Below are positions 16,102-46,340 of a DNA stretch of 64,000 nucleotides, piece by piece. Location: positions 248,001 to 312,000 of the IMG/VR virus record IMGVR_UViG_3300023174_000036, one strand, 5' to 3'. The position numbers were made by a program, and so were the translations under genes. How positions within the stretch are numbered: the first letter of the stretch is position 1; each line of letters begins with the position of its first letter. The notes beneath the pieces are model-generated. The model did no database searches and was not told where the DNA came from. It saw nothing but the letters and a program-made list of their open reading frames with translations.

Positions 16102-16178
16102 TGGAGTGGGTGACAGGACTCGAACCTGCATGGAACGGATTTGCAATCCGGGGCCTAACCATTCAGCGGCACACCCAC
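16102..16178 (-). tRNA. tRNA-Cys(GCA)
   Basis: Cloverleaf, U73, encoded CCA. Confidence 0.95.
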
Positions 16179-16183
16179 ATATT

Positions 16184-16258
16184 TGGTACCTGGACACGGT
16201 TTCGAACCGCGGACCCTCTCGGTGTAAACGAGACGCTCTACCCCTGAGCTATCCAGGC
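16184..16258 (-). tRNA. tRNA-Val(TAC)
   Basis: Cloverleaf, encoded CCA. Confidence 0.95.
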
Positions 16259-16265
16259 AAAATTA

Positions 16266-16526: not shown

Positions 16527-16546
16527 ATGTGCTCCGTTAAAATTAT

Positions 16547-16575
16547 ATTATACAGATAGTTTGTGGAAATGTCAA
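16547..16575 (-). promoter_or_regulatory. Consensus sigma70 promoter TTGACA-N17-TATAAT
   Basis: Perfect consensus. Confidence 0.85.
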
Positions 16576-17893: not shown

Positions 17894-17899
17894 GATAAT

Positions 17900-19792: not shown

Positions 19793-19834
19793 TCAAATAC
19801 TTATCCTTTAAAAGTGGCCTGCCATAAATATTTC

Positions 19835-21165: not shown

Positions 21166-21176
21166 CTTATAGTGGT

Positions 21177-21803
21177 TTATGTTGCAATGTCGTAATCTAA
21201 ATTGCCAGCAATACATATCCTATACTCGTCGCTGGTATAAAACGGATGAACGCTATGTGACATCCTTGATGGAAACATAATCATCCTACCTTCCCAACTA
21301 TTATCAACTGGCATGGCATTTAATTGCACTTGACCTAACACATCTGTGTAATGTATATTGAATGAAGGACCTGTTATTGATGTTTTTTCCGATAAAGTAT
21401 TGTGATTTAATTCGTCTGCCATCATAAATGGTACTCGCAACCAGATTACAAAACTAAGTATTCCTTCATGAAAGTGTGCAGACATAAATTCTGTTTTTTC
21501 TTGAAAATTCACCCAACATTTTGTTATCTTTAATTTTCGATTAGTATTCAAATCTCTATAATTAAATGTTGATTTAAACTCGTTCGTTAATGGAATTATT
21601 TTTGACTCTAGATAACTTAAACAATCTATTATTGCAAATTCTTTTTTTACATTGCCGGCATGAAAATGATTTACAAAACTAGCATTCTCGCTATTGAGAA
21701 TAGAATTAACTTCTTTCCACAGAGGTTTTAATTCATCATCTGAAAGCGAGTTTCCTAAAATACCTATATTGGGAAAATGTAGTTGTAAACTTTGATCTAA
21801 CAT
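21177..21803 (-). CDS. 2OG-Fe(II) oxygenase (phage TIGR02466-like)
   Basis: CWVN...HFH...MFPSRMSHSV...RICIAGN. Confidence 0.8.
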   Translation of the reverse strand: MLDQSLQLHFPNIGILGNSLSDDELKPLWKEVNSILNSENASFVNHFHAGNVKKEFAIIDCLSYLESKIIPLTNEFKSTFNYRDLNTNRKLKITKCWVNFQEKTEFMSAHFHEGILSFVIWLRVPFMMADELNHNTLSEKTSITGPSFNIHYTDVLGQVQLNAMPVDNSWEGRMIMFPSRMSHSVHPFYTSDEYRICIAGNLDYDIAT

Positions 21804-21861
21804 TTAAAATCCTTCTACTTGTAAAAATTAATTCCTTATGTTTTTACTTATCAAGTAAATT

Positions 21862-21938
21862 TGGTCGGAGTACAAGGATTCGAACCTTGGACCCCCTGGT
21901 CCCAAACCAGGTGCGCTACCAGACTGCGCTACACTCCG
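21862..21938 (-). tRNA. tRNA-Pro(TGG)
   Basis: Cloverleaf, CCA. Confidence 0.95.
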
Positions 21939-22177
21939 AATTGTTTCTTTCTAATCTTCATTCCAACATAAGTGCCACAAAATGCGCCTGCCATTGCTGG
22001 AATAATTAGCCAGTGATTGGTTGTGTAATTTATAACGGCTACACTTCCTAAAATATAGCAGGCTACACTCCATCCGCTGGCTTTTAATACTTGTTCGTAT
22101 TGTATACATCTCAGATAGTATGTGTAAACAATATCAAGTAAAAAAATTGCAAAAAATGTTGTTATGTAATCTATCAT
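21929..22177 (-). CDS. Small membrane protein
   Basis: Three hydrophobic segments. Confidence 0.65.
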   Translation of the reverse strand: MIDYITTFFAIFLLDIVYTYYLRCIQYEQVLKASGWSVACYILGSVAVINYTTNHWLIIPAMAGAFCGTYVGMKIRKKQFGV

Positions 22178-22181
22178 ATCA

Positions 22182-22255
22182 TGGAGCGGGATAAGAGAAT
22201 CGAACTCTTGACCGAAGATTGGAAATCTGCTGTTTTACCATTAAACTAATCCCGC
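22182..22255 (-). tRNA. tRNA-Gly(TCC)
   Basis: Cloverleaf, CCA. Confidence 0.95.
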
Positions 22256-22260
22256 ATACT

Positions 22261-22351
22261 TTATTAGAATACATTTAAGCCTTTTTCATCACGCTGATGG
22301 TGGCCGGTCCTTGCTACTCAAACTATGTTCAAGCTAAATGTACTTTAATAA
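22261..22351 (-). ncRNA. Stem-capped small RNA A (UUUGAGUAG-CAAGGACCGGCCA motif)
   Basis: Long terminal stem; motif shared with element B at 24274-24406. Confidence 0.5.
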
Positions 22352-22352
22352 A

Positions 22353-22554
22353 GTGTCCGGCTACTCACACCACATGAGCCCCGGACTGAGCGGTTACTCT
22401 GTCCACGTTCTTTTCCATTTAGACGGGCAACGTCCCTGCCTTTGTGATTTCTCAAGTCGTTCCTAAAGAGAACCTTGCGGTAGATCCAACGCACCGTACA
22501 GTTATCGTTACTGTAATGACGCACTTTATTAACGTAAAAGTGTAATCCGGGGTC
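22353..22554 (-). ncRNA. Unassigned ~200-nt multibranch structured RNA
   Basis: Closing stem GACCCCGGAT/GTCCGGGGCTC and several internal hairpins; no ORF. Confidence 0.5.
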
Positions 22555-22558
22555 TTTT

Positions 22559-22634
<76 letters not shown>

Positions 22635-22650
22635 AAGCTATTACTTATTT

Positions 22651-22884
22651 TTAAGTAGTACTAGTACTAGCAGTTCCGGTATCGTTAGTTTGATATCCAG
22701 TAGGGCCGTTTCCACGTAGTGCATTTTTATCACGTGTAGGAGTTTTGATAACAATTTCACTACATAACTGAGCATCAATCATCATTCGCTTGTATTGATT
22801 TCGTTGATCAGCAGTTGCGCCTTTCATCAATCCAATCATGCGTTTTGTTGTTTTACTCAGTTTAAATGTCTTGTTTGGTTTCAT
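22651..22884 (-). CDS. Hypothetical protein
   Basis: ORF with AAGG SD between tRNA genes. Confidence 0.65.
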   Translation of the reverse strand: MKPNKTFKLSKTTKRMIGLMKGATADQRNQYKRMMIDAQLCSEIVIKTPTRDKNALRGNGPTGYQTNDTGTASTSTT

Positions 22885-22903
22885 GTTTTACCTTTTAGTT
22901 ATT

Positions 22904-22993
22904 TGGCGGAACGAAAGAGACTCGAACTCTTAAACCGACTTTCGCCGATCGACGGATTAGCAATCCGCTCCAATACCATTATGGGACCGTTCC
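22904..22993 (-). tRNA. tRNA-Ser(GCT)
   Basis: Long variable arm, G73, CCA. Confidence 0.95.
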
Positions 22994-23019
22994 TTGTTCT
23001 TTTACTTATTACTAATACT

Positions 23020-23104
23020 TGGTGCGAGTGGCCGGAATCGAACCGGCACGACCGAAGCCGAGAGATTTTAAGTCTCTTGTGTCTACCTATTTCACCACAC
23101 TCGC
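23020..23104 (-). tRNA. tRNA-Leu(TAA)
   Basis: Long variable arm, CCA. Confidence 0.95.
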
Positions 23105-23108
23105 AATT

Positions 23109-23339
23109 TTAAACTCGTTCTCGCTTTGTTCTGCCAATGCGGCTAGCTTTGTTCCAATTGTAAACAGCACCATCCGGGCATTTACCATTTGCAACAGTGT
23201 CTACACCAAATCGTCCCACTACTTCAAAATCTGGACCTTTAATAGTTACAAATACCCCAACGGCCTTGGCGTATGCCATTGCTTCGTTTAAGGTTATAAA
23301 TCTTTCTAATTCTCTGTCATTACATATAACTTTGTACAT
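23109..23339 (-). CDS. Hypothetical protein (MYKVICNDRE...)
   Basis: ATG just downstream of the 23346-23374 promoter; the longer ORF-track start lies inside tRNA-Trp. Confidence 0.65.
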   Translation of the reverse strand: MYKVICNDRELERFITLNEAMAYAKAVGVFVTIKGPDFEVVGRFGVDTVANGKCPDGAVYNWNKASRIGRTKRERV

Positions 23340-23345
23340 GTTGTT

Positions 23346-23374
23346 ATTATACTCTCTTCTGGTGCTGTTGTCAA
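23346..23374 (-). promoter_or_regulatory. Consensus sigma70 promoter TTGACA-N17-TATAAT
   Basis: Perfect consensus. Confidence 0.85.
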
Positions 23375-23387
23375 CACTTATTTTATA

Positions 23388-23461
23388 TGGCGTACCCTCA
23401 GGGACTCGAACCCCGACCGACAGTTTTGGAGACTGTAATGCTGCCATTACACTAAGGATAC
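23388..23461 (-). tRNA. tRNA-Trp(CCA)
   Basis: Loop CT-CCA-AA, G73, CCA. Confidence 0.95.
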
Positions 23462-24004
23462 ATATTCTTTAAAAATTTCTTCTGCTTGGTTCCAACACAA
23501 TGGTTTGTTATCTTTTATTAATGGAAAAGAAAAACAATACCTTTCAGAATCAACTGCTGATATATTGTGTAACATACCAACATTGACTAAACTTGGTTGT
23601 CCTACTTGGGCCGAATATACTAGCTCGCAATCCTCTTCCTCTGCTAGTATATAATCAGTTCCTGTTGGAGTTTTTAGACATTTTAATTTACTTGGATCTT
23701 TACAAACAAACCAATTCATTTTTGATGGTGTATTGCAATACACAAAATTAATTTTTACATGATTGTCAAAATCTTCATCGTCCAAATGAATTGGTAGTTT
23801 ATTGTATTCGCCCTCATTGGCTGGATTTGATTTTAAATGAAATAGCTCTGCTTTACCAATTTCTATTTGTAGTGATGACAACCAGTCTATCAATTCTTTA
23901 TTGATTAAACTTTTATCGTACATCGATATTACCGGAGCGTTTTCCAGAAAAACTGGCATAAATTTAACCGGAATATTTAAGTTATGATGGAATGTATTTT
24001 TCAT
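23447..24004 (-). CDS. Hypothetical protein, possible 2OG/cupin fold
   Basis: IHLD...HNI...RY pattern. Confidence 0.5.
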   Translation of the reverse strand: MKNTFHHNLNIPVKFMPVFLENAPVISMYDKSLINKELIDWLSSLQIEIGKAELFHLKSNPANEGEYNKLPIHLDDEDFDNHVKINFVYCNTPSKMNWFVCKDPSKLKCLKTPTGTDYILAEEEDCELVYSAQVGQPSLVNVGMLHNISAVDSERYCFSFPLIKDNKPLCWNQAEEIFKEYVSLV

Positions 24005-24017
24005 ACGTTATTTATTA

Positions 24018-24107
24018 TGGCGGAAGCGGTGAGATTCGAACTCACGGTGCCTTTCGACACGACAGTTTTCAAGACTGTTGCAATAAGCCGGACTCTGCCA
24101 CGCTTCC
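24018..24107 (-). tRNA. tRNA-Ser(TGA)
   Basis: Long variable arm, CCA. Confidence 0.95.
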
Positions 24108-24112
24108 TAATT

Positions 24113-24197
24113 TGGTGCCCCCCAAGAGACTCGAACTCTCACACCTTTCGATACCAGAACCTAAATCTGGCGCGTCTACCAATTTCGCCAAAGGGGC
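24113..24197 (-). tRNA. tRNA-Leu(TAG)
   Basis: Long variable arm, CCA. Confidence 0.95.
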
Positions 24198-24203
24198 AAA
24201 TAG

Positions 24204-24267
24204 AAACACACTAAGGGCAATGCCATCTTACTATCCCAGTATGTCGGGTGTTGCTTAGTGTGCTTTT
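24204..24267 (-). ncRNA. Stem-capped small RNA C
   Basis: AAAGCACACTAAG...CTTAGTGTGTTT terminal stem. Confidence 0.4.
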
Positions 24268-24273
24268 ATATAC

Positions 24274-24406
24274 TTCCATATAGGTGCTCTCTGCGGCGCT
24301 TGAATCCTCGGTAGCCCTTCTCTTCATGGCCGGTCCTTGTACATGGTCGACATTGACAAGTATTTCGGTGTTCCACTGTAGCTACTCAAAGAGCACGTAT
24401 ATGGAA
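24274..24406 (-). ncRNA. Stem-capped small RNA B (UUUGAGUAGC...CAAGGACCGGCCA motif)
   Basis: Stem TTCCATATACGTGCTCT/AGAGCACCTATATGGAA overlapping tRNA-Glu CCA; motif shared with A. Confidence 0.5.
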
Positions 24407-24476
24407 GAGCCAAGGGGAGTCGAACCCCTCTTCTCAGGATGAAAACCTGATGTCCTAACCGATAGACGATGGCTCC
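24402..24476 (-). tRNA. tRNA-Glu(TTC) copy 1
   Basis: Cloverleaf, loop TT-TTC-AT, CCA. Confidence 0.9.
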
Positions 24477-24527
24477 ATATGTAATTTTAATTTTTAATGA
24501 ACGAGACTAATTGCTTAGTATGTGACT

Positions 24528-24556
24528 ATTATATAACAACAATATAAGTTAGTCAA
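24528..24556 (-). promoter_or_regulatory. Sigma70-like promoter TTGACT-N17-TATAAT within tRNA array
   Basis: Direct motif match. Confidence 0.75.
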
Positions 24557-24564
24557 CCTTTATC

Positions 24565-24639
24565 TGGCCGGCCATGCAGGAATCGAACCCACACCCTCTG
24601 TTTCGAAGACAGAGATGATATCCATTTCACCAATGGCCG
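24565..24639 (-). tRNA. tRNA-Arg(TCG)
   Basis: Loop CT-TCG-AA, CCA. Confidence 0.9.
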
Positions 24640-24653
24640 TAATATATATTTAC

Positions 24654-24728
24654 TGGTCCGGCTAGCAGGAATCGAACCCACATTCATGAGGTAGAAGCTC
24701 ATTGTACTATCCATTGTACTATAGCCAG
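24654..24728 (-). tRNA. tRNA-Arg(TCT)
   Basis: Loop CT-TCT-AC, CCA. Confidence 0.9.
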
Positions 24729-24729
24729 C

Positions 24730-24810
24730 TGGTACCCCAGGCGGGATTTGAACCCGCATCTAAATTTCTCCTTTTGAGAGAGACGACTTTGCCAATTTGT
24801 CTACTGGGGC
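24730..24810 (-). tRNA. tRNA-Leu(CAA)
   Basis: Loop CT-CAA-AA, CCA. Confidence 0.9.
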
Positions 24811-24816
24811 ATTGTT

Positions 24817-24892
24817 TGGTGCAACCTCCAGGAATCGAACCTGGTTCAACGGTTCTTCAGACCGCCGCTATGACCACATCAGCTAAAGTTGC
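24817..24892 (-). tRNA. tRNA-Phe(GAA)
   Basis: Cloverleaf, CCA. Confidence 0.95.
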
Positions 24893-24894
24893 AT

Positions 24895-24986
24895 TGGTAC
24901 CAGCGGAGGGGATCGAACCCTCTCAAGAACGCTAATCTGGCGCTAAAAGTCTTATAAGGACTCTCTGACTACCAAGTCTCGCTGGC
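24895..24986 (-). tRNA. Atypical tRNA with TAT anticodon (Ile by anticodon), long variable arm, reduced D arm
   Basis: GCCAGCG/CGCTGGT-A-CCA, loop CT-TAT-AA, 92 nt. Confidence 0.75.
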
Positions 24987-24994
24987 ATTAAAAT

Positions 24995-25070
24995 TGGGGT
25001 GTTAGATGGGGAACGATCCCATACTATCGCTTTCACAGAGCAATGTGCAGACCACTACACTACTAACACC
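24995..25070 (-). tRNA. tRNA-His(GTG)
   Basis: G-1:C73, loop CT-GTG-AA, T loop GATCG variant. Confidence 0.9.
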
Positions 25071-25075
25071 ATAGA

Positions 25076-25149
25076 TGGCACCCGGACTAGGGATCGAACC
25101 TAGGCTAACAGAGTCAAAGTCTGTTGTGCTACCATTACACAATCCGGGA
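25076..25149 (-). tRNA. tRNA-Gln(TTG)
   Basis: Cloverleaf, CCA. Confidence 0.95.
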
Positions 25150-25327
25150 ATAAATATTTGTGTGAAGACTTACGAACACATAACACCGCAAGGGTTACAT
25201 TTTCATCTTTGTTTATACGAAGGTGTATGCTGTGTCATGGTACAGGATGTGTACGACAATACATATTTTGAACTACAGTACTTCACTGATGTTAACAAAG
25301 CATTGCGCTTTATCAATAACTTATAAA

Positions 25328-25401
25328 TGGAGCGGGTAGCGAGAATCGAACTCGCGAATAAACCTTGGCAAGGTTTCAGGTTACCATTACATCATACCCG
25401 C
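25328..25401 (-). tRNA. tRNA-Gly(GCC)
   Basis: Cloverleaf, U73, CCA. Confidence 0.95.
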
Positions 25402-25660
25402 ATAAGAAATTAGTAAAAAGCTCTGAGAAGTTTTGGTCCGCACTCAAGCGAAACATGGCTACCCGCGGTTCACAGCCGCGCCCTACTTGTCTAGCAAACA
25501 TGGAGTATCACTTACTTTCGAGGATCTCCCGGACTGTAATCCTGATCCACCACCCGGTTGAAGTGCAGTTTATAACTGCAAAATCATTTGAGGCTTCCGA
25601 CCTTTGATGATTACTCTTGCGAGACTTCTCGATACCTTGAGCCTTTTACTAATTGCTTAT
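25402..25660 (-). ncRNA. Unassigned ~255-nt multibranch structured RNA
   Basis: ~22-bp interrupted closing stem (AATTAGTAAAA/TTTTACTAATT), nested GAGAAGT/ACTTCTC, GNRA-capped hairpins. Confidence 0.55.
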
Positions 25661-26268
25661 GAAAATTCTGGACGTTTAAAATTTATATTAAACGAAATAC
25701 TTATACGTTCATCATCTGTGTAATTTGCAGGAACACCGTGATTTAACCAGCCCGGAAACAAAATAAATTTACCAATCTTAGGTTCGTAAGATACGTTGTT
25801 TGGAAGATGTTCAAGCAAATATGTTGAAAACTGCGGAACTGGATTCATAAAATTTATGCTGCCGTCATCGCCATTTGTTCTGTAATAATAAACACCTGCA
25901 ATGTCTACACTGCCATGATTGTGTGTATGTGCAAATTCATTTTTTCCAGTATTGGTCATCCAAGATTGTATAATTCTAAATTCTTGTATCTTGCTCACTG
26001 GCACGTCTAGCATTCGCATGTACTCAAACACATGAAACTTCAAAGCGTCAATAAACGCAGTGGTTTGATAGTCCAACAGTAGATTGGATTCGAACGATGT
26101 GTCTGACAATTTGTGTGTGTTTGGCAACCATTGCTCGTTGTGTTTGAACGAATCCTTTGCTTTCAAATCCGCAACTACCCGATCTAATTCTGATTGTACT
26201 GCAATTAATTCGTCGCCCTCAATCACACTGTTATAAATTGGTGTTGCAAAGTATCCATGAACGCTCAT
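25657..26268 (-). CDS. 2OG-Fe(II) oxygenase (phage TIGR02466-like)
   Basis: SWMT...HTHNH...LFPGWLNHGV...RISISFN. Confidence 0.85.
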   Translation of the reverse strand: MSVHGYFATPIYNSVIEGDELIAVQSELDRVVADLKAKDSFKHNEQWLPNTHKLSDTSFESNLLLDYQTTAFIDALKFHVFEYMRMLDVPVSKIQEFRIIQSWMTNTGKNEFAHTHNHGSVDIAGVYYYRTNGDDGSINFMNPVPQFSTYLLEHLPNNVSYEPKIGKFILFPGWLNHGVPANYTDDERISISFNINFKRPEFS

Positions 26269-26304
26269 ACATATCCTTTATTTTAGAATATTTATTTTTA
26301 TGCT

Positions 26305-26379
26305 TGGTGGTAATAGTAGGATTTGAACCTACACCTTGCTCCGTATGAAGGAGGTGCACTACCGTTATGCTATATTACC
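26305..26379 (-). tRNA. tRNA(CAT): elongator Met or Ile2
   Basis: Loop TT-CAT-AC, G1-C72, CCA; identity not decidable by eye. Confidence 0.85.
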
Positions 26380-26380
26380 A

Positions 26381-26481
26381 TATGTAAACACACTAAGGTG
26401 TATTAAGTATGCGGGCTATGCCTATCGCAGTGACTGGGATACCAAACCTGATCTTTTTACAGATTAAAGTATGTTTACATA
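26381..26481 (-). ncRNA. Stem-capped small RNA D
   Basis: TATGTAAACATACT...AGTGTGTTTACATA terminal stem between two tRNAs. Confidence 0.4.
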
Positions 26482-26556
26482 TGGTAGGGGCACAGGGAAT
26501 CGAACCCTGATAGACTGGTTAAAAGCCAGCTATTCTAGCCGTTGAATTATACCCCC
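26482..26556 (-). tRNA. tRNA-Lys(TTT)
   Basis: Loop CT-TTT-AA, CCA. Confidence 0.95.
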
Positions 26557-26560
26557 ATAT

Positions 26561-26636
26561 TGGTCCACTCAGTCGGATTCGAACCGACACCTCATTGATT
26601 AAGAGTCAAGTGCGCTACCATTAACGCTACAAGTGG
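26561..26636 (-). tRNA. tRNA-Lys(CTT)
   Basis: Loop CT-CTT-AA, CCA. Confidence 0.95.
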
Positions 26637-26747
26637 TTGGTCGTAATTAAATTGATTTAATGTGCCAACCAGGACCAATACGGGGTCTAGATTGACACTA
26701 ACGTTTAGCACGTTTCATGTCGTTCTCCTTATGAACATTTTTAAAAA

Positions 26748-26804
26748 CAGGATGCTTATTTTTCAATTAAAAGTTGAATTTTTGAATTTGCTGTTCGCAT
26801 CCTA
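26748..26804 (-). ncRNA. Y-like ncRNA copy 3 (57 nt, ACAGCAA family; Lys(UUU)-like anticodon arm)
   Basis: TAGGATGC-GA-ACAGCAA...TTCAA-CTTTTAA-TTGAA...GCATCCTG. Confidence 0.65.
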
Positions 26805-26808
26805 AACT

Positions 26809-26883
26809 TGGTACTCCGAACGGGTTTCGATCCCGCTTCTCCAACTTGAAAGGCTGGCGTCCTAGCCACTAGACGACCGGAGT
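26809..26883 (-). tRNA. tRNA-Glu(TTC) copy 2
   Basis: Loop CT-TTC-AA, CCA; sequence divergent from copy 1. Confidence 0.9.
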
Positions 26884-26888
26884 ATATT

Positions 26889-26963
26889 TGGTAGCCAATG
26901 ATGGGAACGATCCATCGACCCTCGCCTTATCAAGACGATGCTCTACCACTGAGCTAATTGGCT
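26889..26963 (-). tRNA. tRNA-Ile(GAT)
   Basis: Cloverleaf, CCA. Confidence 0.95.
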
Positions 26964-26968
26964 ATATT

Positions 26969-27044
26969 TGGTGGAGGTGACAGGGATCGAACCTGCGACA
27001 TCTTGCTTGCAAAGCAAACGCTCTCCCAACTGAGCTACACCCCC
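26969..27044 (-). tRNA. tRNA-Ala(TGC)
   Basis: G3:U70, CCA. Confidence 0.95.
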
Positions 27045-27052
27045 ATATTATA

Positions 27053-27802
27053 TTATTTGATGGAGTTTATTTTAACTAGACCAAAAAATTTCAAAATTAA
27101 AATTATCCCATACGCCAGATCAAATTCCCACCATTTTTCTGAAAATTTAGCTTTAGTGGTATCATCATGATGGTTGGCAGCCAACTCTTCGCCGACGTAC
27201 AGCAGTCCTATAGGAAACATGTTCCGAGAACGATCAGCGCCTTTGGCTGGCCTATTTCGATATCCTATTGTGTGACTTAGATAGTTATGCGCACGAAGAT
27301 GGAACTGTGTATATACAAACAAGATAACACCAAATACCACTCCCCATATACCAAACGCAATTAAAGCCAAAATTCCTGCTATTGGATATCTATATTTAGA
27401 ATACTTTACTAATTGATGTTCTAGTTTATCAGTGTATACAGGCACATCGTTACCCCATTTTTCAATTTCCTCAGGAGTCAAATAGTACGCTGGAGTAGCT
27501 GGAGATGGCTCTTGAGTGAAAAACAAATCTATTTTACTGAAGTAAATTGGACTGTGTGGATCATCCGGTGTGTCAGAAGTAGCATGATGCTTTCTATGAC
27601 CCGCAACAAATGCACGGACAGAATCACCAGGATACCAAAAACCTATAAACCATAACCATGTTCTAGAAAAATATTCTAATCTAGTACTTACTATAGAAAC
27701 TGATCGATGGGCCAATATTCTATGAATATAAATTGCATAAACATTGCAAGTTATGAAAAAAATTGTTAGATAACACCACAACATCCACTGATAATCAAGC
27801 AT
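27053..27802 (-). CDS. Membrane fatty acid (acyl-CoA/acyl-lipid) desaturase
   Basis: His boxes HRILAH, HRKHH, NHH; DPHSP; FDL. Confidence 0.85.
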   Translation of the reverse strand: MLDYQWMLWCYLTIFFITCNVYAIYIHRILAHRSVSIVSTRLEYFSRTWLWFIGFWYPGDSVRAFVAGHRKHHATSDTPDDPHSPIYFSKIDLFFTQEPSPATPAYYLTPEEIEKWGNDVPVYTDKLEHQLVKYSKYRYPIAGILALIAFGIWGVVFGVILFVYTQFHLRAHNYLSHTIGYRNRPAKGADRSRNMFPIGLLYVGEELAANHHDDTTKAKFSEKWWEFDLAYGIILILKFFGLVKINSIK

Positions 27803-27862
27803 GTATTGCTCCTTAAATATATTGAATATTTATTGATAACTCAGTATGCTTGATTACTTGAT

Positions 27863-27938
27863 TGGCTCCACAGCCTGGGCTCGAACCAGGGACCAAATGA
27901 TTAACAGTCATCTACTCTACCAACTGAGCTACTGCGGA
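27863..27938 (-). tRNA. tRNA-Asn(GTT)
   Basis: Cloverleaf, CCA. Confidence 0.95.
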
Positions 27939-27945
27939 ATAAACT

Positions 27946-28020
27946 TGGCGGTCCCAAGGAGGATCGAACTCCTAACCTCGGCGTGACAAGCCGACATTAT
28001 AACCATTTAACTATGGGACC
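27946..28020 (-). tRNA. tRNA-Asp(GTC)
   Basis: Cloverleaf, CCA. Confidence 0.95.
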
Positions 28021-28026
28021 TAAATT

Positions 28027-28112
28027 TGGTGGAGTATCCTGGGATCGAACCAGGCGTGCCATTACGACGGCGGATTTACAGTCCACTGCATCACCATTGA
28101 TGCTTCTACTCC
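28027..28112 (-). tRNA. tRNA-Tyr(GTA)
   Basis: Long variable arm, CCA. Confidence 0.95.
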
Positions 28113-30225: not shown

Positions 30226-30250
30226 AAAAAAGGCACTCGAAAGTGCCTTC
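30226..30250 (-). terminator. Terminator after tmRNA
   Basis: AAGGCACT-TTCG-AGTGCCTTTTTT. Confidence 0.85.
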
Positions 30251-30592
30251 TTTGGTTATTGGTTTACAAGGCTAACCAGCCCCGGAGTTGCGGTTTCTTA
30301 GGCCGCCATTGCAAAGTCTGCATCATTAGCTGAAAAAGCTACTGAAGCTGGAACTTTGAAATACTCGAATGTATTTGCGTTTGCATTTACGAGTTTTGCT
30401 TGATTTACAGTCATCGCCTACTGAGTTGCCGTCTCCATTATCTCACCCTGTCGAAACCATGGCTGGCCCATCATAAACACATTAATGAGGAATCTAGGCG
30501 GATTGCAAGACCCAATGATTAATATGTTTATGGTGGACCAGGTGGGAGTCGAACCCACGTCCAGAATGCCTTCACTTTGAAGGGATTACAAC
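30251..30592 (-). ncRNA. ssrA: Circularly permuted (two-piece) tmRNA
   Basis: Acceptor piece with T arm and CCA at 30531-30592; hairpin intervening segment 30470-30530; coding piece starts GGGCCAG at 30469 (G3:U70); tag ORF 30384-30298. Confidence 0.9.
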
Positions 30593-30608
30593 TATCTCTT
30601 TAACCACA

Positions 30609-30812
30609 TTACTGTGGTTGAATATTTGCTGCCTGCAAGCCTTTTTGACCTTGTACTACATCAAATGATACTGATTGATTCTCTTGCAGAACTTTGAATC
30701 CTGATGTCTGAATCGCTGAGTAGTGAGCAAACAAATCCTCACCACCGTTGTCTGGAGTAATAAACCCAAAACCTTTGGTTTCATTAAACCATTTTACTTT
30801 ACCTGTTGCCAT
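30609..30812 (-). CDS. cspA: Cold-shock protein
   Basis: [15 protein letters not shown] (RNP1), DLFAHYS (RNP2). Confidence 0.95.
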
Positions 30813-41440: not shown

Positions 41441-42124
41441 TTATCGTATTTCGGGGAACAAGCAATCCTGAATGAACACTTGCACATCTTCTTCACTTAG
41501 CCCTAAACTAACCATAACTTTGGGGGTATGCGGGTTTTGTTTTTGATTTTCACAGTAGTAATTCTGTGCTTCCGTGGTATCGTTGGCAGTGTTATTGGTT
41601 TCATCCACAGTTTCCAAGTAATGATTAACTAGAATATGTGCTAAACTTGCAATTTGTTTTAATTCGTTTTCATCGCTTACATTACCAGCGGCCACCATGT
41701 GTTCACTGAAAATACGTTCTGCCCAGTCGGGTAATTTGCGTTTTTTGTTCCATTCATAGCGACCAACTTCTTCGCCAAAATATTCAATCATGTGATGTTC
41801 TTTATCGCCAGCTGGGCTGTAGTCAATAAAGCATCCGGTAATTTTGTTCTTACCTGCTACGACATCAAATCCAAAGATAGGTGCTGGATTATGTGTATGT
41901 GGAAAAATGCAACAGTGCATCATCCACAACCCCTTGGTCTCACGAGCATCTACAACATCAATGTGTGCTCTGCGATAACGACTACTGGCCCATACTTTGT
42001 TAACCCATCCTGGTTGATTAAAACGATCCATACTGGGTTCGTTAATAATACTGCCAGTTGCATAAAACTGACTTTCAAAGTACTGTTCAATTTTGATCAG
42101 TGTATCCCATACATTACTCTCCAT
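41441..42124 (-). CDS. Ferredoxin-dependent bilin reductase (PcyA/PcyX-like)
   Basis: YRRAHI...MHCCIFP...PIFGFD...DYSP...LPDWA..IFS...QKQNPHT. Confidence 0.85.
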   Translation of the reverse strand: MESNVWDTLIKIEQYFESQFYATGSIINEPSMDRFNQPGWVNKVWASSRYRRAHIDVVDARETKGLWMMHCCIFPHTHNPAPIFGFDVVAGKNKITGCFIDYSPAGDKEHHMIEYFGEEVGRYEWNKKRKLPDWAERIFSEHMVAAGNVSDENELKQIASLAHILVNHYLETVDETNNTANDTTEAQNYYCENQKQNPHTPKVMVSLGLSEEDVQVFIQDCLFPEIR

Positions 42125-42656
42125 GATAAAGATCCTTCATCATTTTAATAGCGTATTCAAACGCCACACGAGCTTCGTCTCCAAGGTCGTCCGTGAGTTC
42201 TGCACGAATTGCGGCTTTGAGTGCATCAGCATCTTCAAACTGATAAAACTTACCGCTAGTATAAGGCACTTGTTTGGCAATAATTTGTCCGCCAAACAAG
42301 TCGCCCATGTGTCTGCAATACAAGTGTGCTTTGACCAAATGCTTACGTGCTGGATCGTTACACAATGCATGTAGATACGTTTGATACTCTAATGTGGCCG
42401 GAGTCAGATAGTGATAACTGCCATCGTCTAATTCATTAAAGTCTTGAACAATTGCCCGTAGTCTTGGTAATGTTGGCATGTTGTCAAAAAAACCTTGACG
42501 CTTGCCGTACCATTCGATTGGGTCGTAGATTGCTAGAAGATTGTACAAATAGTTTCTGTAGTCTGCTTTTTGAATTTTGCCACTTAGTAGTAACTGTGCA
42601 AATTTGGTTGTTTCTGCCTCATGATGGAGGTCTTTGGTAATTTCTCGTAAGCTCAT
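42114..42656 (-). CDS. Heme oxygenase
   Basis: T..LHHEAE, AHLYCRHMGDLFGGQII, FYQF. Confidence 0.9.
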   Translation of the reverse strand: MSLREITKDLHHEAETTKFAQLLLSGKIQKADYRNYLYNLLAIYDPIEWYGKRQGFFDNMPTLPRLRAIVQDFNELDDGSYHYLTPATLEYQTYLHALCNDPARKHLVKAHLYCRHMGDLFGGQIIAKQVPYTSGKFYQFEDADALKAAIRAELTDDLGDEARVAFEYAIKMMKDLYHGE

Positions 42657-42955
42657 TCTTCTTCCAATTTGATTTGGAGAGGATGATTATTAGTACGAGC
42701 TTGATTGGTTGCTTCAACTGCTTTGGCTTCAGCAATTTCAAAACTATAAACACCAGCAATTCCGCTACCAGTTTCATGCACTTCTGCCATCACATGATGT
42801 GCAGTATCTGGATTATGTTTAAAAATTTCAATCAATACCGAAACAACAAAATCCATTGGAGTTGAATCATCGTTGAGCAGGATAACCTTCCATCTTTTAG
42901 GTTCGCTTACTACTACTTTAATTTTCTCATCTAGTTGAATATCCGTGCCTGCCAT
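42653..42955 (-). CDS. clpS: ClpS N-degron adaptor
   Basis: WKVILLNDDSTPMDFVV...VHETG.GIAG. Confidence 0.95.
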   Translation of the reverse strand: MAGTDIQLDEKIKVVVSEPKRWKVILLNDDSTPMDFVVSVLIEIFKHNPDTAHHVMAEVHETGSGIAGVYSFEIAEAKAVEATNQARTNNHPLQIKLEEE

Positions 42956-42970
42956 TTAGTTCTCCAAAGT

Positions 42971-42990
42971 TGGGGGAGTTTCCTCCCCCA
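42971..42990 (-). terminator. Hairpin after hsp20
   Basis: TGGGGGAG-TTTC-CTCCCCCA. Confidence 0.6.
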
Positions 42991-43003
42991 TTGTTATTTA
43001 CAA

Positions 43004-43429
43004 TTATTTAATTTCAATAGTGCGTGGTTTGAGCGCATCTGGTACAACTCGTTTGATATCGATTTGTAACATACCGTTATCAACTTTTGCACCTACAACT
43101 TCCATATACTCGGCAAGAGTAAATGTTTGCTCAAAGTCACGAGCTGCCAATCCACGATGCAAGTATTCAATACCCACATCTTTGTTTGGACGATTCATAA
43201 CTCCTCTAATTGTCAGTTGATCTTGATCAACTTCAACTGCAATTTCTTCCTTGGTAAAACCTGCGACCGCAACTTCAATTGCATAGCTGGTATCGCTATA
43301 CTTAACAATGTTGTGGGGAGGGTAGTTACCATTTTGGTGACTTGGTACGTTAAAGTAACGATCAAATCCTACCAGTGCTTTGCTCAGTTGTGCCAAAGCG
43401 GCTGTGTCTATAGTTCTAAGTTGGTTCAT
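43004..43429 (-). CDS. Small heat-shock protein (Hsp20/IbpA-like)
   Basis: YPPHNI, IEVAVAGF, YLHRGLA.R.F...F.L. Confidence 0.95.
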   Translation of the reverse strand: MNQLRTIDTAALAQLSKALVGFDRYFNVPSHQNGNYPPHNIVKYSDTSYAIEVAVAGFTKEEIAVEVDQDQLTIRGVMNRPNKDVGIEYLHRGLAARDFEQTFTLAEYMEVVGAKVDNGMLQIDIKRVVPDALKPRTIEIK

Positions 43430-43482
43430 AATTTTCTCCTTTAAATAAGCAAGAACCTCGCAGGACCCCGAAGGCGTCCTGC
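43430..43482 (-). promoter_or_regulatory. ROSE-like RNA thermometer upstream of hsp20
   Basis: UUCG-capped 5' hairpin, then UUCUUGCUU pairing with AAGGAGAA with bulged G. Confidence 0.7.
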
Positions 43483-43496
43483 ATGTTTATATTATA

Positions 43497-45401
43497 TTAC
43501 TTCTTGTCTGCGGGGTCAACCTCTGTGAAGGCCGCATCCACAGTTTGTTCACCACCTTCAGTTTGTGGTGCATTTTTGGCCTGCTCAGCGGCTTGTTTTT
43601 TAGACATAACCGGATTGGCCGCTTCAAAAAATGCAGTTAACGAAGTAGTGATAGCTTCTACATCTTCACCAGCAATTGCTGTTTGCACAGATGCCAATGC
43701 TGTTTCGTATGCAGTCTTTTCTTCTTCAGTCAACTGATCTTTGAATTCTTCAAAGTCTTTCTTAACACCGTGCGTGGTAGATTCTGCATTGTTACGTGCA
43801 TCAATCAACTCACGAGCTTTTTTATCAGACTCTGCATTTTCTTCAGCTTCCTGTACCATGCGTTGGATCTCAGCTTCGGTTAATCCCGAGTCTGACTTAA
43901 TAGTGATATTGTTTTCTTTACCAGTATTTTTATCTTTAGCACTGATTTTCATAATGCCGTTGGCATCGATATCAAATGTAACTTCAATTTGTGGCATACC
44001 GCGTGGTGCAGGAGCAATGCCATCCAACTTGAACTCACCCAATGCTTTGTTGTATTTGAACAATTCACGTTCACCTTGTGCTACCTTGATGTCAACAGCT
44101 GGTTGATTGTCGTCCGCAGTACTGAATGTTTGACTAGCTTTGGTTGGGATAGTTGTGTTCTTTTGAATCAACTTGGTAAACACACCACCCATTGTTTCAA
44201 TACCTAGTGATAATGGAGTAACGTCCAACAATAGAACGTCTGTCTTATCGCCTGCCAACACAGCACCTTGTACTGCGGCACCAGCGGCAACTGCTTCGTC
44301 TGGGTTAACATCTTTGCGTGGCGCCTTGCCAAACAGTTTCTCAACTGCTTCTTGTACTTTAGGCATACGTGTTTGTCCGCCAACTAGGATAACTTCATCA
44401 ATGTCAGCGGAAGTCACTTTAGCGTCCTTCATAGCAATCTTACATGGCTCAATTGATCGCTCGATAAGTTGCTCAACCATTGATTCAAACTTAGCACGAC
44501 TAATAGTTACATTCATGTGCTTAGGACCGCTTGCATCTGCGGTAATGTACGGCAAGTTAACACTGGTACTTGCTGTGCTAGACAACTCAATCTTGGCTTT
44601 CTCAGCTGATTCTTTCAAGCGTTGCAGAGCCAACATGTCTTTCTTCAAATCAATGCCAGAATCTTTCTTAAACTCGTCAACCAAATGATCCATGATAACT
44701 TGGTCAAAGTCTTCACCACCTAGGAATGTGTCGCCGTTTGTGCTTAGTACTTCGATTTGTTTATCGCCGTCGATATTCGCGATTTCAATGATCGAGATGT
44801 CGAAAGTACCACCACCAAGGTCGTAAACAGCAATTTTCCTATCTCTTTTATCAGCTTTATCAACGCCATAAGCAAGAGCTGCCGCAGTAGGCTCATTAAT
44901 AATACGGAGTACTTCCAAACCGGCAATGCGGCCAGCATCTTTAGTTGCTTGTCTTTGGCTGTCGTTAAAGTACGCAGGAACTGTGATAACTGCTTGGGTA
45001 ACTTCATGACCTAAATAGTCCTCCGCGGTCTTTTTCATTTTACGCAACACTTCAGCTGACACTTGCTGTGGTGCAAGTTTCTCGCCGTTAGCTTCGATCC
45101 ACGCATCACCGTTGTCAGCTTTGATGATTGAATAAGGCATTAGATCAATATCTTTTTGCACAGCTGATTCGTCAAACTTGCGGCCAATGAGACGCTTGCT
45201 TGCGTAGATTGTGTTTTTGGGGTTTGTGACTGATTGTCGTTTTGCTGTGGCACCTACTAGAATTTCTTTTTCTGTATATGCAACGATTGATGGTGTTGTT
45301 CTAGCACCTTCGCTGTTTGGGATTACTTTAGCAACTCCGCCTTCTAGGATTGCTACACAGCTATTTGTTGTACCTAAATCGATACCGATGATTTTGCTCA
45401 T
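43497..45401 (-). CDS. dnaK: Chaperone DnaK (Hsp70)
   Basis: [36 protein letters not shown]. Confidence 0.98.
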
Positions 45402-45455
45402 AATTTTCTCCTTTAAATTAAGCAAGAATATGTAAAACCCTTACGGCGTTTTACA
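45402..45455 (-). promoter_or_regulatory. ROSE-like RNA thermometer upstream of dnaK
   Basis: GUAA-capped hairpin, then UUCUUGCUU-AAUUUA-AAGGAGAA; near-identical to hsp20 leader. Confidence 0.65.
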
Positions 45456-45467
45456 AATTTATTTATC

Positions 45468-45752
45468 TCAGATATTCTCTAAATTCTGAATATTTGACCA
45501 TTTTTTTAGTTTTTCAATCTTAGCTTCTTGGGCACGTTCAATGTTAGTATAGCTAACAATATCCATGCTTTGTAAGATATCAATCATGGCCAGCATATCG
45601 CCCAATTCTTCTTCAAGATGTTCTCTGTTAGTTTTGGGCTTTCCTGGTTTGAAATTATCTAGTCCAAAGCGGCTGATTTTACTTACCGCTTGTATAACTT
45701 CAGCACATTCTTCTTGGAGAATATCCATTACTTCTTTAGTTTGACTGTCCAT
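45468..45752 (-). CDS. MazG-like nucleotide pyrophosphohydrolase
   Basis: QEECAEVIQ...LEEELGDML. Confidence 0.85.
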   Translation of the reverse strand: MDSQTKEVMDILQEECAEVIQAVSKISRFGLDNFKPGKPKTNREHLEEELGDMLAMIDILQSMDIVSYTNIERAQEAKIEKLKKWSNIQNLENI

Positions 45753-45755
45753 ATA

Positions 45756-46340
45756 TTACCTTTGATTTGCAAATGGTGCGATATAATCGCCTGCACTGGT
45801 TGTGCTAGTGCGTAGTGTATTGTAGACATTTTGAATACCCACTGCTTGATTCCAAGCATCTTCCAATGCATGGTGGGCAGTAACTGGTGGGCGTTGTGGG
45901 TTGATACCTAAATCAAATGCTGTACGCACATCACGCACTTCCCAAAATTTCCAAGGAATAGCACGATTAATTTTGCGGTAAACATGCTCGCAAATGATGA
46001 TATCAAAGCAACTGCCATTTGCCCAAACACGTTTAGCACCCCAACAGAATTTATACAAGCGAGCAAATGCTTCTTCTATATCAAGTCTGTCAGTAGGATC
46101 AAAAGCCGCATCCTGGGCTTCTTTGCTTTGGCTAGCCCACCAAGCAATAGTATCATCGTTAGTGGTTAGTCCAATTCGGTCACAGCTATCTGTGTCTACC
46201 TTACAATAAAAACTATCCATTTTTGGCTCTTGTAATTCTCTGCCGAACGGATCAAATTTTACTGCGCCGATTGTAAGTATGGTTGCATCTGGAGTAGTGT
46301 TAAGCGTCTCCAAATCAATCATAACGTCTGTATTTGCCAT
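45756..46340 (-). CDS. DEDDh 3'-5' exonuclease
   Basis: MIDLETL, WANG..FD, HHALEDA. Confidence 0.9.
   Translation of the reverse strand: MANTDVMIDLETLNTTPDATILTIGAVKFDPFGRELQEPKMDSFYCKVDTDSCDRIGLTTNDDTIAWWASQSKEAQDAAFDPTDRLDIEEAFARLYKFCWGAKRVWANGSCFDIIICEHVYRKINRAIPWKFWEVRDVRTAFDLGINPQRPPVTAHHALEDAWNQAVGIQNVYNTLRTSTTSAGDYIAPFANQR

What the first reader, a model, noticed from the sequence alone, without database searches (positions are those of the whole stretch)
43430..45455. Matching ROSE-like RNA thermometers in front of phage hsp20 and dnaK
Seen: both leaders read [stable tetraloop hairpin]-UUCUUGCUU-A(A)UUUA-AAGGAGAA-AAUU-AUG. UUCUUGCUU pairs with the Shine-Dalgarno leaving a bulged G. 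I did not notice this motif before other genes in the window. Established: the U(U/C)GCU/SD hairpin with a bulged G is the ROSE thermometer hallmark, known mainly for small heat-shock genes of alpha- and gamma-proteobacteria. A ROSE on dnaK and in a lytic phage would be unusual, and would imply temperature-gated translation of phage chaperones (inference).
Basis: partly seen in the sequence, partly recalled or inferred. Interest (0 to 1): 0.7.

Follow-up and report, generated by a model that had tools for sequence, protein, structure and literature searches.

The report
ROSE-like leaders on phage chaperone genes
The hsp20 and dnaK genes of a 356-kb T4-like freshwater phage carry the same short two-hairpin mRNA leader with the hallmarks of bacterial ROSE RNA thermometers, and hsp20 has this leader in many other aquatic phages too, which suggests but does not prove temperature-dependent chaperone synthesis.

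Summary
On the minus strand, hsp20 (43004-43429) and dnaK (43497-45401) are each preceded by a tetraloop hairpin, then UUCUUGCUU, a 5-6 nt loop, AAGGAGAA, AAUU and AUG. This composite motif occurs only twice in the whole 356-kb genome and is not expected by chance.

Comparative data support the ROSE-like reading:
- About 160 distinct orthologous leaders keep hairpin I through compensatory changes (10 of 11 pairs).
- They keep the core CU(U/C)GCU, with its bulged G, opposite an invariant Shine-Dalgarno sequence.
- The same leader precedes hsp20 in 79 of 79 cyanophage-type loci and in phages Melnitz, Mosig, Phosso and S-SSM5. In another viral contig it precedes a groES gene.
- Rfam ROSE_3 matches the Melnitz and C48C1 leaders below its threshold.
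- A model built from the phage hsp20 leaders weakly matches genuine enterobacterial ibpA/ibpB ROSE elements.

Caveats:
- The window's own two copies match no Rfam ROSE model.
- The Shine-Dalgarno helix cannot be tested by covariation, because both sides are invariant.
- Hairpin II is weak (about -2 kcal/mol at 37 C).
- Temperature gating is inferred, not shown.

Verdict: a new (viral, dnaK-linked) member of a known kind.

The parts
43491..43519 (-). Sigma-70-like promoter of hsp20: TTGACC, 17 nt, TATAAT. It lies inside the last codons of dnaK. The -10 hexamer ends about 8 nt before hairpin I.
   Evidence: 11 of 12 consensus positions, the best site in 42900-45900. TTGAC and TATAAT are conserved in orthologous loci. 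Promoter function is inferred.
43460..43482 (-). hsp20 leader, hairpin I: 7-bp outer stem, bulged G, CC/GG inner stem, UUCG tetraloop.
   Evidence: Covariation across orthologues: 8 of 11 pairs (MAFFT alignment) and 10 of 11 pairs (model-fitted alignment) show changes on both sides.
43434..43455 (-). hsp20 leader, hairpin II: UUCUUGCUU (43447-43455), loop AUUUA, AAGGAGAA containing the Shine-Dalgarno sequence (43434-43441). 8 pairs with a bulged G.
   Evidence: 94.7-97.8% of alignment cells form standard pairs, but there are essentially no compensatory changes because both sides are nearly invariant.
43004..43429 (-). hsp20 gene (141 aa), start codon at 43427-43429.
   Evidence: Pfam HSP20 E 2.6e-16; PHROG 432 Hsp20 E 2.3e-36.
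45460..45467 (-). GATAAATA, a T4-late-type promoter-like motif directly after the mazG stop codon and 5 nt before hairpin I of the dnaK leader.
   Evidence: ATAAATA is conserved upstream of dnaK leaders. 69 of the 75 genome copies of ATAAATA are followed within 120 nt by an ATG-initiated ORF of at least 60 aa. Promoter function is inferred.
45432..45454 (-). dnaK leader, hairpin I: same architecture as in the hsp20 leader, with the outer six stem pairs differing in sequence and a GUAA loop.
   Evidence: The model R1, built only from hsp20 leaders, finds this leader at 51.5 bits, E 1e-12.
45406..45428 (-). dnaK leader, hairpin II: UUCUUGCUU (45420-45428), loop AAUUUA, AAGGAGAA (45406-45413).
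   Evidence: It is the minimum-free-energy fold of the whole leader at 15 C but not at 37 C.
43497..45401 (-). dnaK gene (634 aa from the ATG at 45399-45401).
   Evidence: Pfam HSP70 E 3.4e-258, covering residues 4-601.

Best explanation
Both leaders belong to a phage-borne family of short, two-hairpin ROSE-like 5' untranslated regions.

Proposed mechanism:
1. Transcription starts a few bases before hairpin I. For hsp20 it starts from a sigma-70-type promoter inside the end of dnaK. For dnaK it starts from a T4-late-type ATAAATA motif.
2. Hairpin I is a stable structural module at the 5' end of the mRNA.
3. In hairpin II, the conserved CU(U/C)GCU(U) pairs imperfectly with the Shine-Dalgarno AAGGAG(AA). 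There is one bulged G and one G-U (or G-C) pair next to it. At low temperature this hides the ribosome-binding site.
4. The weak, A-U-rich helix melts as temperature rises, and translation of the chaperone mRNA increases.

Shown here: the sequence anatomy; its restriction to chaperone genes; the structure of hairpin I by covariation; conservation of the imperfect anti-Shine-Dalgarno core across distant phages; and model-level similarity to bacterial ROSE elements.

Inferred: the transcription start sites; formation of hairpin II in vivo; and temperature-dependent translation.
For: 1. Specificity. There are only two copies in 356 kb, both before chaperone genes. Two complete relatives (383 and 372 kb) have matches only at the hsp20 and dnaK leaders. 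All 146 matches in 736 kb of related loci lie at hsp20, dnaK or groES starts, apart from one at an unassigned 81-aa ORF. Of 126 exact pattern matches in viral contigs, 60 precede hsp20, 13 precede dnaK and 1 precedes groES, and most of the rest have no downstream ORF.

2. ROSE hallmark. The core is CUUGCU (137), CUCGCU (13) or other (7) in 157 distinct leaders, and never the perfect complement of the Shine-Dalgarno sequence. In 49 distinct cyanophage leaders CUCGCU occurs 48 times. The U/C variation is at the position defined for ROSE in PMC3669281 and PMC11342760.

3. The invariant columns of 69 hsp20 leaders are the GG of hairpin I, CU.GCU, two positions of the Shine-Dalgarno sequence (its other positions are at least 90% conserved) and AUG.

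4. Hairpin I has 10 of 11 pairs with compensatory changes.

5. Similarity to validated ROSE elements. Rfam ROSE_3 aligns end to end with the Melnitz hsp20 leader (34.1 bits, E 2e-4), including a hairpin I with the same bulged G, and with the C48C1 leader (26.8 bits). R1 hits enterobacterial ibpA/ibpB leaders, which Rfam ROSE_2 scores above its threshold, at E 0.003-0.03. An Enterobacter sHSP leader carries the identical UUCUUGCUU...AAGGAGAA.

6. Similar stability reached in different ways. CUUGCU forms have about 7.3 pairs and -4.2 kcal/mol at 25 C. CUCGCU forms have about 5.4 pairs and -5.0 kcal/mol.

7. The window's dnaK leader is predicted to fold as the two-hairpin ROSE form at 15 C. The predicted probability that the Shine-Dalgarno sequence is open rises from 0.02 at 5 C to 0.5 at 25 C and 0.87 at 37 C.
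Against: - The window's two leaders hit no Rfam ROSE model, even at E<=10 on an 86-nt search. Seven close relatives gave no hit at E<=1.
- Hairpin II shows essentially no compensatory change, so pairing cannot be told apart from plain sequence conservation.
- Hairpin II is weak (-1.7 to -2.0 kcal/mol at 37 C). At 37 C the minimum-free-energy folds of both full leaders use other pairings.
- In the hsp20 leader, GGUUC pairs with GAACC of codons 2-3, and predicted Shine-Dalgarno accessibility hardly changes with temperature (0.46-0.64).
- In dnaK leaders, UUGCUUA can pair with UGAGCAA (start codon and codons 2-3), leaving the Shine-Dalgarno sequence in a loop.
- The folding model keeps proven ROSE_2 elements closed up to 50 C, so it cannot be used as a test either way.
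- Metatranscriptome contigs gave no information on transcript 5' ends.
- There is no experiment.
Confidence: 0.6

Rival explanations
1. The leader is a constitutive expression module, not a thermometer. Hairpin I protects the 5' end of the mRNA from decay. Partial occlusion of the Shine-Dalgarno sequence simply sets a fixed translation level for abundant chaperone mRNAs, with no meaningful temperature response in the range the phage and its host experience.
For: Hairpin I sits at the predicted 5' end, as 5' stabiliser hairpins do. Hairpin II is very weak. Predicted Shine-Dalgarno accessibility of the window's hsp20 leader is nearly flat with temperature. hsp20 is a core cyanophage gene that PMC3037559 suggests may act in capsid maturation, a need that does not depend on temperature.
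Against: A generic stabiliser and ribosome-binding site would not be confined to chaperone genes. It would also not conserve a deliberately imperfect anti-Shine-Dalgarno core with the same bulged G and the same U/C alternative as validated thermometers.
Confidence: 0.2
2. The conserved CU(U/C)GCU and the conserved (Y)GCC...GGG(R) bulged-G core of hairpin I are recognition sites for a trans-acting factor. This could be a phage or host RNA-binding protein or a small RNA that controls chaperone mRNAs during infection. The complementarity to the Shine-Dalgarno sequence would then be secondary.
For: There is sequence invariance without covariation in hairpin II. The inner part of hairpin I, including the bulged G, is conserved more than a plain stem requires.
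Against: The same leader occurs in phages of very different hosts (Synechococcus, Pelagibacter, Methylophilales, Sinorhizobium, unknown freshwater hosts) and, in related form, in enterobacteria. This favours an RNA-intrinsic mechanism. No RegA or RegB homologue was found in this genome by Pfam, though that search had no positive control. In Pseudomonas the two-hairpin ROSE-like element works alone in vitro and in E. coli (PMC3669281).
Confidence: 0.12
3. In the dnaK leader the motif acts by pairing with the start codon region (UUGCUUA with UGAGCAA) rather than with the Shine-Dalgarno sequence. This would still be a melting-type switch, but of a different geometry from ROSE.
For: This 11-pair helix is the minimum-free-energy fold at 37 C (-5.4 kcal/mol against about -2.0 for the ROSE register) and dominates the predicted ensemble of most dnaK leaders.
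Against: hsp20, groES and cyanophage leaders have no such partner but keep the motif. In dnaK leaders with CUCGCU the alternative helix is weakened and the second codon varies (AGC, AGU, UCU, UCA), while pairing with the Shine-Dalgarno sequence is strengthened. At 15 C the ROSE fold is the predicted minimum.
Confidence: 0.05
4. The hairpin plus the U-rich UUCUUGCUUAUUU is simply the intrinsic terminator of the upstream gene (mazG or dnaK), followed by an ordinary ribosome-binding site.
For: Hairpin I lies 13-14 nt after the stop codons of mazG and dnaK and is followed by U-rich sequence after a 3-4 nt spacer.
Against: Promoter-like motifs sit between the upstream stop codon and hairpin I. In cyanophage leaders 10-14 nt of A/C-rich spacer separate hairpin I from the motif, so there is no U tract. 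The G and C inside the motif are invariant. The element is absent after other genes.
Confidence: 0.03

Closest known systems
Short two-hairpin ROSE-like RNA thermometers of Pseudomonas ibpA (Krajewski et al. 2013, PMC3669281)
   Same: A 5' UTR of about 60 nt before a small heat-shock gene. It has two hairpins: a temperature-insensitive hairpin I, and a short 3' hairpin II in which U(U/C)GCU pairs imperfectly with the Shine-Dalgarno sequence. The AUG is left unpaired.
   Different: In Pseudomonas the core is clamped by G-C pairs on both sides and the promoter is sigma-32 type. Here hairpin II is A-U rich with only two G-C pairs, and the promoters look like sigma-70 type and T4-late type. The genome is viral, and one copy is on dnaK.
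Rfam ROSE_3 (RF02523)
   Same: The consensus has a hairpin I with ...AUGCC...GGGU... and a bulged G, then ACUcGCu...aGgAG and AUGAcU. It aligns end to end with the Melnitz hsp20 leader.
   Different: Scores stay below the gathering threshold of 43 bits (34.1 and 26.8). The window's copies and seven close relatives gave no match at E<=10 and E<=1 respectively.
Enterobacterial ibpA/ibpB ROSE elements (Rfam ROSE_2, RF01832)
   Same: UUCUCGCU or UUCUUGCUU lies opposite AGGAG with a bulged G. The preceding hairpin also has a bulged G on its 5' side. An Enterobacter sHSP leader has the identical 9-mer and Shine-Dalgarno context.
   Different: The bacterial elements are longer (E. coli-type ROSE is described as having three to four hairpins), and their hairpin II is 2-3 kcal/mol more stable. 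R1 matches them only weakly (16-20 bits).
Classical rhizobial ROSE (RF00435)
   Same: The U(U/C)GCU / Shine-Dalgarno principle upstream of small heat-shock genes.
   Different: It has three to four hairpins over about 94 positions, and the AUG is included in the last hairpin. There was no match in this genome at E<=10.
Other RNA thermometers in phages: lambda cIII (recalled from memory) and the fourU element before blyA of prophage SPbeta (mentioned in PMC11342760)
   Same: cis-acting mRNA structures in phage genomes that couple translation to temperature.
   Different: They have unrelated sequences and structures, are not ROSE type and are not on chaperone genes.

Membership tests
ROSE-like RNA thermometers (as defined in PMC3669281 and PMC11342760) | Located in the 5' untranslated region of a heat-shock gene (typically a small HSP) | tested here: met
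   The element lies directly upstream of hsp20 and dnaK. Promoter-like motifs end 5-8 nt before hairpin I. The transcription start sites themselves are not mapped.
ROSE-like RNA thermometers | U(U/C)GCU motif opposite the Shine-Dalgarno sequence, with imperfect pairing and a predicted bulged G | tested here: met
   The bases of UUCUUGCUU pair with those of AAGGAGAA as U-A, U-A, C-G, bulged G, U-G, U-A, C-G, U-A, U-A. The core is CUUGCU or CUCGCU in 150 of 157 distinct jumbo-phage leaders and in 49 of 49 distinct cyanophage leaders.
ROSE-like RNA thermometers | Two to four hairpins, with the Shine-Dalgarno sequence in the 3'-proximal one | tested here: inconclusive
   Hairpin I is proven by covariation. 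Hairpin II has 94.7-97.8% of cells paired in the jumbo-phage alignments (85.9% in the cyanophage alignment), but essentially no compensatory change. It is the minimum-free-energy fold of the isolated segment up to 30 C (one outer pair opens above that) and of the dnaK leader at 15 C. It is not the minimum-free-energy fold of either full leader at 37 C.
ROSE-like RNA thermometers | Score at or above the gathering threshold of an Rfam ROSE model (RF00435, RF01832, RF02523) | tested here: not met
   No match for the window's leaders. Homologous leaders of Melnitz and C48C1 score 34.1 and 26.8 bits against a threshold of 43. Positive control: enterobacterial ibpA leaders score 69-71 bits against a threshold of 65. 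This is an operational criterion, not a biological definition.
ROSE-like RNA thermometers | Heat-induced melting of the Shine-Dalgarno hairpin and temperature-dependent translation | not testable with these tools
   Only in-silico data are available. The dnaK leader is predicted to open with a midpoint near 25 C, and the hsp20 leader is ambiguous. The same computation fails to open proven ROSE_2 elements.
ROSE-like RNA thermometers | Loss of thermoregulation when the bulged G is deleted or the adjacent U-G pair is changed to C-G | not testable with these tools
   This needs reporter assays. Natural variation shows that both U and C occur at that position and that the G is nearly invariant.
Intrinsic (Rho-independent) terminators | G+C-rich hairpin immediately followed by a run of U | tested here: not met
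   A 3-4 nt spacer (10-14 nt of A/C-rich sequence in cyanophages) separates hairpin I from a tract that contains an invariant G and C. The consensus scan did not call hairpin I as a terminator.

The most novel reading that the evidence does not exclude
These leaders would define a virus-borne chaperone regulon. One cis-acting RNA module sits in front of hsp20, dnaK, groES and at least one unassigned 81-aa gene in T4-like and jumbo phages of lakes and oceans. It is tuned to be weaker than its bacterial ROSE relatives. Translation of viral chaperones, and so possibly infection success, would then respond to water temperature in the 10-30 C range independently of the host's heat-shock regulators.
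Probability: 0.4. Interest if true: 0.75.

Novelty: new member of a known kind. Interest (0 to 1): 0.6.

Why it matters
ROSE elements are the commonest bacterial RNA thermometers. In the papers read here they are described for bacterial small heat-shock, virulence-associated and ABC-transporter genes. In the literature I could search, I found no report of them in phages or in front of dnaK or groES.

hsp20 is a core gene of T4-like cyanophages (PMC3037559), which are among the most abundant viruses in the sea. If its universal leader is a working thermometer, then synthesis of a viral auxiliary protein is directly coupled to water temperature. That would bear on how phage-host dynamics respond to season and warming, and it is easy to test with reporter fusions.

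The leader is also a practical annotation handle. It marks phage genes that belong to the same regulon, including an unassigned 81-aa ORF. Current Rfam thresholds miss it in the phage loci tested here.

Tried and rejected
- **Rfam scans of the window.** I ran gathering-threshold scans and scans at E<=10 on 3 kb and on 86 nt. No ROSE family matched the window's copies. A 13-bit 'freshwater-2' match (E 4.5) was taken as chance.
- **Rfam on seven close relatives.** Nothing at E<=1.
- **Metatranscriptome contigs from four lake or freshwater RNA runs.** Most pieces laid on dnaK are 90-95% alike and may come from other organisms' dnaK. The near-identical pieces are low and even in depth and could be DNA. 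No transcript 5' end could be read.
- **Bacterial donors of hsp20.** Only 5 loci were found in 185,579 species genomes, at 38-44% identity, so there is no close donor. They served as positive controls for ROSE_2 instead.
- **Third R1 match in the genome.** The match at G000 316436-316490 is a plain hairpin plus ribosome-binding site without the motif, so it was rejected.
- **Other chaperone genes.** The J-domain and Cpn10-like genes of this genome lack the leader.
- **RegA and RegB homologues.** None found, but the search had no positive control.
- **Terminator reading.** Rejected (see rival explanations).
- **'Moraphage' paper (PMC12619734).** It reports DnaK, DnaJ and HSP20 in another jumbo lineage but nothing on leaders. 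I did not establish whether this genome belongs to that lineage.
- **Kin search.** 'relatives' is not available for a virus record.
- **Comparison of Shine-Dalgarno accessibility with 44 other AGGAG-led genes of the genome.** The dnaK leader ranked among the 2-5 most occluded of 44 at 10-37 C. The hsp20 value is unreliable because hairpin I was truncated in that script.
Full report
**What is there.** The window lies in a single 356,312-bp viral contig of 39.9% G+C, estimated 96% complete. The contig encodes a T4-type Gp23 capsid protein, about 28 tRNAs and a tmRNA. It is therefore an uncultivated T4-like jumbo phage, and it is found in lake and freshwater metagenomes.

On the minus strand there is a run of auxiliary genes: heme oxygenase, ClpS, hsp20 (43004-43429), dnaK (43497-45401), MazG and a 3'-5' exoribonuclease.

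Each has, in order:
- a 23-nt hairpin with a UUCG (hsp20) or GUAA (dnaK) tetraloop;
- a 3-4 nt spacer;
- UUCUUGCUU;
- a 5-6 nt A/U loop;
- AAGGAGAA, AAUU and AUG.

The two hairpins share the same architecture: a 7-bp outer stem, a bulged G, and a CC/GG inner stem. The outer six stem pairs differ in sequence between the two.

**Is it more than chance?** The composite motif has 2 matches in the window against 0.00 in shuffles. It has only these 2 in the whole genome, even with a mismatch allowed. A covariance model built only from hsp20 leaders of related contigs (R1) finds the dnaK leader at 51.5 bits (E 1e-12) and nothing else credible in 356 kb. The J-domain and Cpn10-like genes of the same genome lack it.

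**Related sequences.** Eighty viral contigs carry the syntenic dnaK-hsp20 pair, with hsp20 at 46-99% identity. In about 157 distinct leaders the core is CUUGCU (137), CUCGCU (13) or other (7), and it is never the perfect complement of the Shine-Dalgarno sequence.

In a MAFFT alignment of 69 hsp20 leaders the invariant columns are the GG of hairpin I, CU.GCU, two positions of the Shine-Dalgarno sequence (its other positions are at least 90% conserved) and AUG.

Hairpin I is proven by covariation:
- 8 of 11 pairs change on both sides in the MAFFT alignment, with 94% of cells paired against at most 59% when the register is slid;
- 10 of 11 pairs change on both sides in a model-fitted alignment of 133 distinct sequences.

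Hairpin II is 94.7-97.8% paired, but both sides are nearly invariant. Pairing therefore cannot be separated from sequence conservation.

**Breadth.** The same leader precedes hsp20 in cultured phages: Synechococcus phage S-SSM5, Methylophilales phage Melnitz, Pelagibacter phage Mosig, Sinorhizobium jumbo phage Phosso, and phage C48C1. In each, a T4-late-type (N)ATAAATA motif (clear in all but Phosso) is followed by hairpin I with (Y)GCC...GGG(R), a core of CU(U/C)GCU (CUUUGCU in Mosig) and AAGGAG (AGGAG in Phosso).
- All 79 S-SSM5-type hsp20 loci fetched from viral contigs have an R1 match ending at the start codon. Their core is CUCGCU in 48 of 49 distinct sequences, and hairpin I covaries.
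- In 736 kb of related loci all 146 matches lie at hsp20, dnaK or groES starts, apart from one at the unassigned 81-aa ORF described below.
- In two complete relatives of 383 and 372 kb only those leaders match.
- Of 126 exact pattern matches in viral contigs, 60 precede hsp20, 13 precede dnaK, 1 precedes a 96-aa GroES and 2 precede an unassigned 81-aa ORF. Most of the rest have no ORF behind them.

[quoted passage not shown] In Pseudomonas ibpA the element is a short two-hairpin form of about 62 nt in which hairpin I does not melt, hairpin II does, and the AUG is unpaired (PMC3669281, PMC11342760). The phage leaders have all of these sequence and architecture features.

- Rfam ROSE_3 aligns end to end with the Melnitz leader (34.1 bits, E 2e-4 on 4.3 kb, 6e-6 on 121 nt) and with C48C1 (26.8 bits, E 0.015). 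Its consensus hairpin I has the same ...AUGCC...GGGU... with a bulged G.
- Conversely, R1 matches enterobacterial ibpA/ibpB leaders at 16-20 bits (E 0.003-0.03). Rfam ROSE_2 scores the ibpA leaders above its threshold (69-71 bits against 65), which also serves as a positive control.
- One Enterobacter sHSP leader carries the identical UUCUUGCUU...AAGGAGAA.

Against membership in the operational sense, the window's two copies match no Rfam ROSE model, and seven close relatives do not either.

**Thermodynamics.**
- The isolated hairpin II is the minimum-free-energy fold up to 30 C (one outer pair opens above that) and is weak: -1.7/-2.0 kcal/mol at 37 C, -4.4/-5.0 at 20 C and about -6 to -7 at 10 C. 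Enterobacterial hairpins are 2-3 kcal/mol more stable.
- Forms with the weaker U-G pair have more flanking pairs (7.3 pairs, -4.2 kcal/mol at 25 C). Forms with C-G have fewer (5.4 pairs, -5.0 kcal/mol). This is compatible with selection for a narrow, marginal stability.
- In full context the window's dnaK leader is predicted to adopt the two-hairpin ROSE fold at 15 C and to open with a midpoint near 25 C. At 37 C an alternative helix between UUGCUUA and the start region wins.
- The hsp20 leader has a window-specific competitor (GGUUC with GAACC), and its predicted accessibility is flat.
- The same computation keeps proven ROSE_2 elements closed to 50 C. I therefore treat in-silico melting as uninformative either way.

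**Promoters.**
- hsp20 has the best sigma-70-like site of the region: TTGACC, 17 nt, TATAAT, 11 of 12 consensus positions, at 43519..43491. It lies inside the end of dnaK and is conserved in relatives.
- dnaK has GATAAATA (45460-45467), abutting the mazG stop codon.
- ATAAATA is rarer than expected in the genome, but 69 of its 75 copies precede ORFs, as a T4-late-type promoter would.
- In both cases the motif ends 5-8 nt before hairpin I. The predicted 5' UTRs are therefore about 55-60 nt and begin with hairpin I. This is inferred; metatranscriptome contigs gave no 5' ends.

**Conclusion.**
- Most likely (about 0.6): temperature-dependent occlusion of the ribosome-binding site.
- Fixed expression or stability module: about 0.2.
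- Operator for a trans-acting factor: about 0.12.
- Start-codon helix for dnaK: about 0.05.
- Terminator: about 0.03.

It is a new member of a known kind. What is new is the viral location, the dnaK (and groES) context, the A-U-rich minimal hairpin II, and the finding that this leader is the rule for hsp20 in aquatic phages. I found no report of this in the searchable literature.

Noticed in passing
window 16105-28112 (-) and 30226-30644 (-): An array of about 28 tRNA genes, and a phage-encoded tmRNA. The tmRNA scores 126 bits on the betaproteobacterial tmRNA model and 136 bits on the permuted-tmRNA model. This could hint at the host and at a phage strategy for ribosome rescue.
   Followed up: no
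window 42114-46340 (-): A cluster of host-like auxiliary genes surrounds the chaperones: heme oxygenase, ClpS adaptor, hsp20, dnaK, MazG and an Rv2179c-like 3'-5' exoribonuclease.
   Followed up: partly
L108:7380-7455 (-) (viral contig of 191,865 bp): The same two-hairpin leader (R1 30.1 bits, exact UUCUUGCUU...AAGGAG) precedes a 96-aa GroES gene.
   Followed up: partly
L042:7196-7499 (-) and L063:5916-5983 (-): The leader (about 23 bits) precedes an 81-aa ORF with no credible Pfam or PHROG assignment. This is a candidate unknown member of the phage chaperone regulon.
   Followed up: partly
window 45392-45428 (-): In dnaK leaders the motif can alternatively pair with the start codon and codons 2-3 (UUGCUUA with UGAGCAA). 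This leaves the Shine-Dalgarno sequence in an 8-nt loop, and it is the predicted fold at 37 C.
   Followed up: partly
G000 175428-176277 (-) and 183906-184314 (-) (outside the window): The genome also encodes a 283-aa J-domain protein and a 136-aa Cpn10-like protein, both without the ROSE-like leader. No GrpE was found.
   Followed up: partly
window 43491-43519 (-): The sigma-70-like promoter of hsp20 overlaps the conserved C-terminal ...EVD codons of DnaK (GTT GAC supplies TTGAC), so coding and promoter constraints coincide.
   Followed up: no
L124 (6,009-bp viral contig): R1 matches are mirrored on both strands (1946-2009 on + and 4001-4064 on -; 1-40 on + and 5970-6009 on -). The contig looks like a palindromic assembly artefact.
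   Followed up: no
window 42971-42990: A G+C-rich hairpin (GGGGGAG...CUCCCCC) lies between hsp20 and clpS. The scan called it terminator-like on the + strand, where the T run lies. It also underlies a chance-level sraA match.
   Followed up: no
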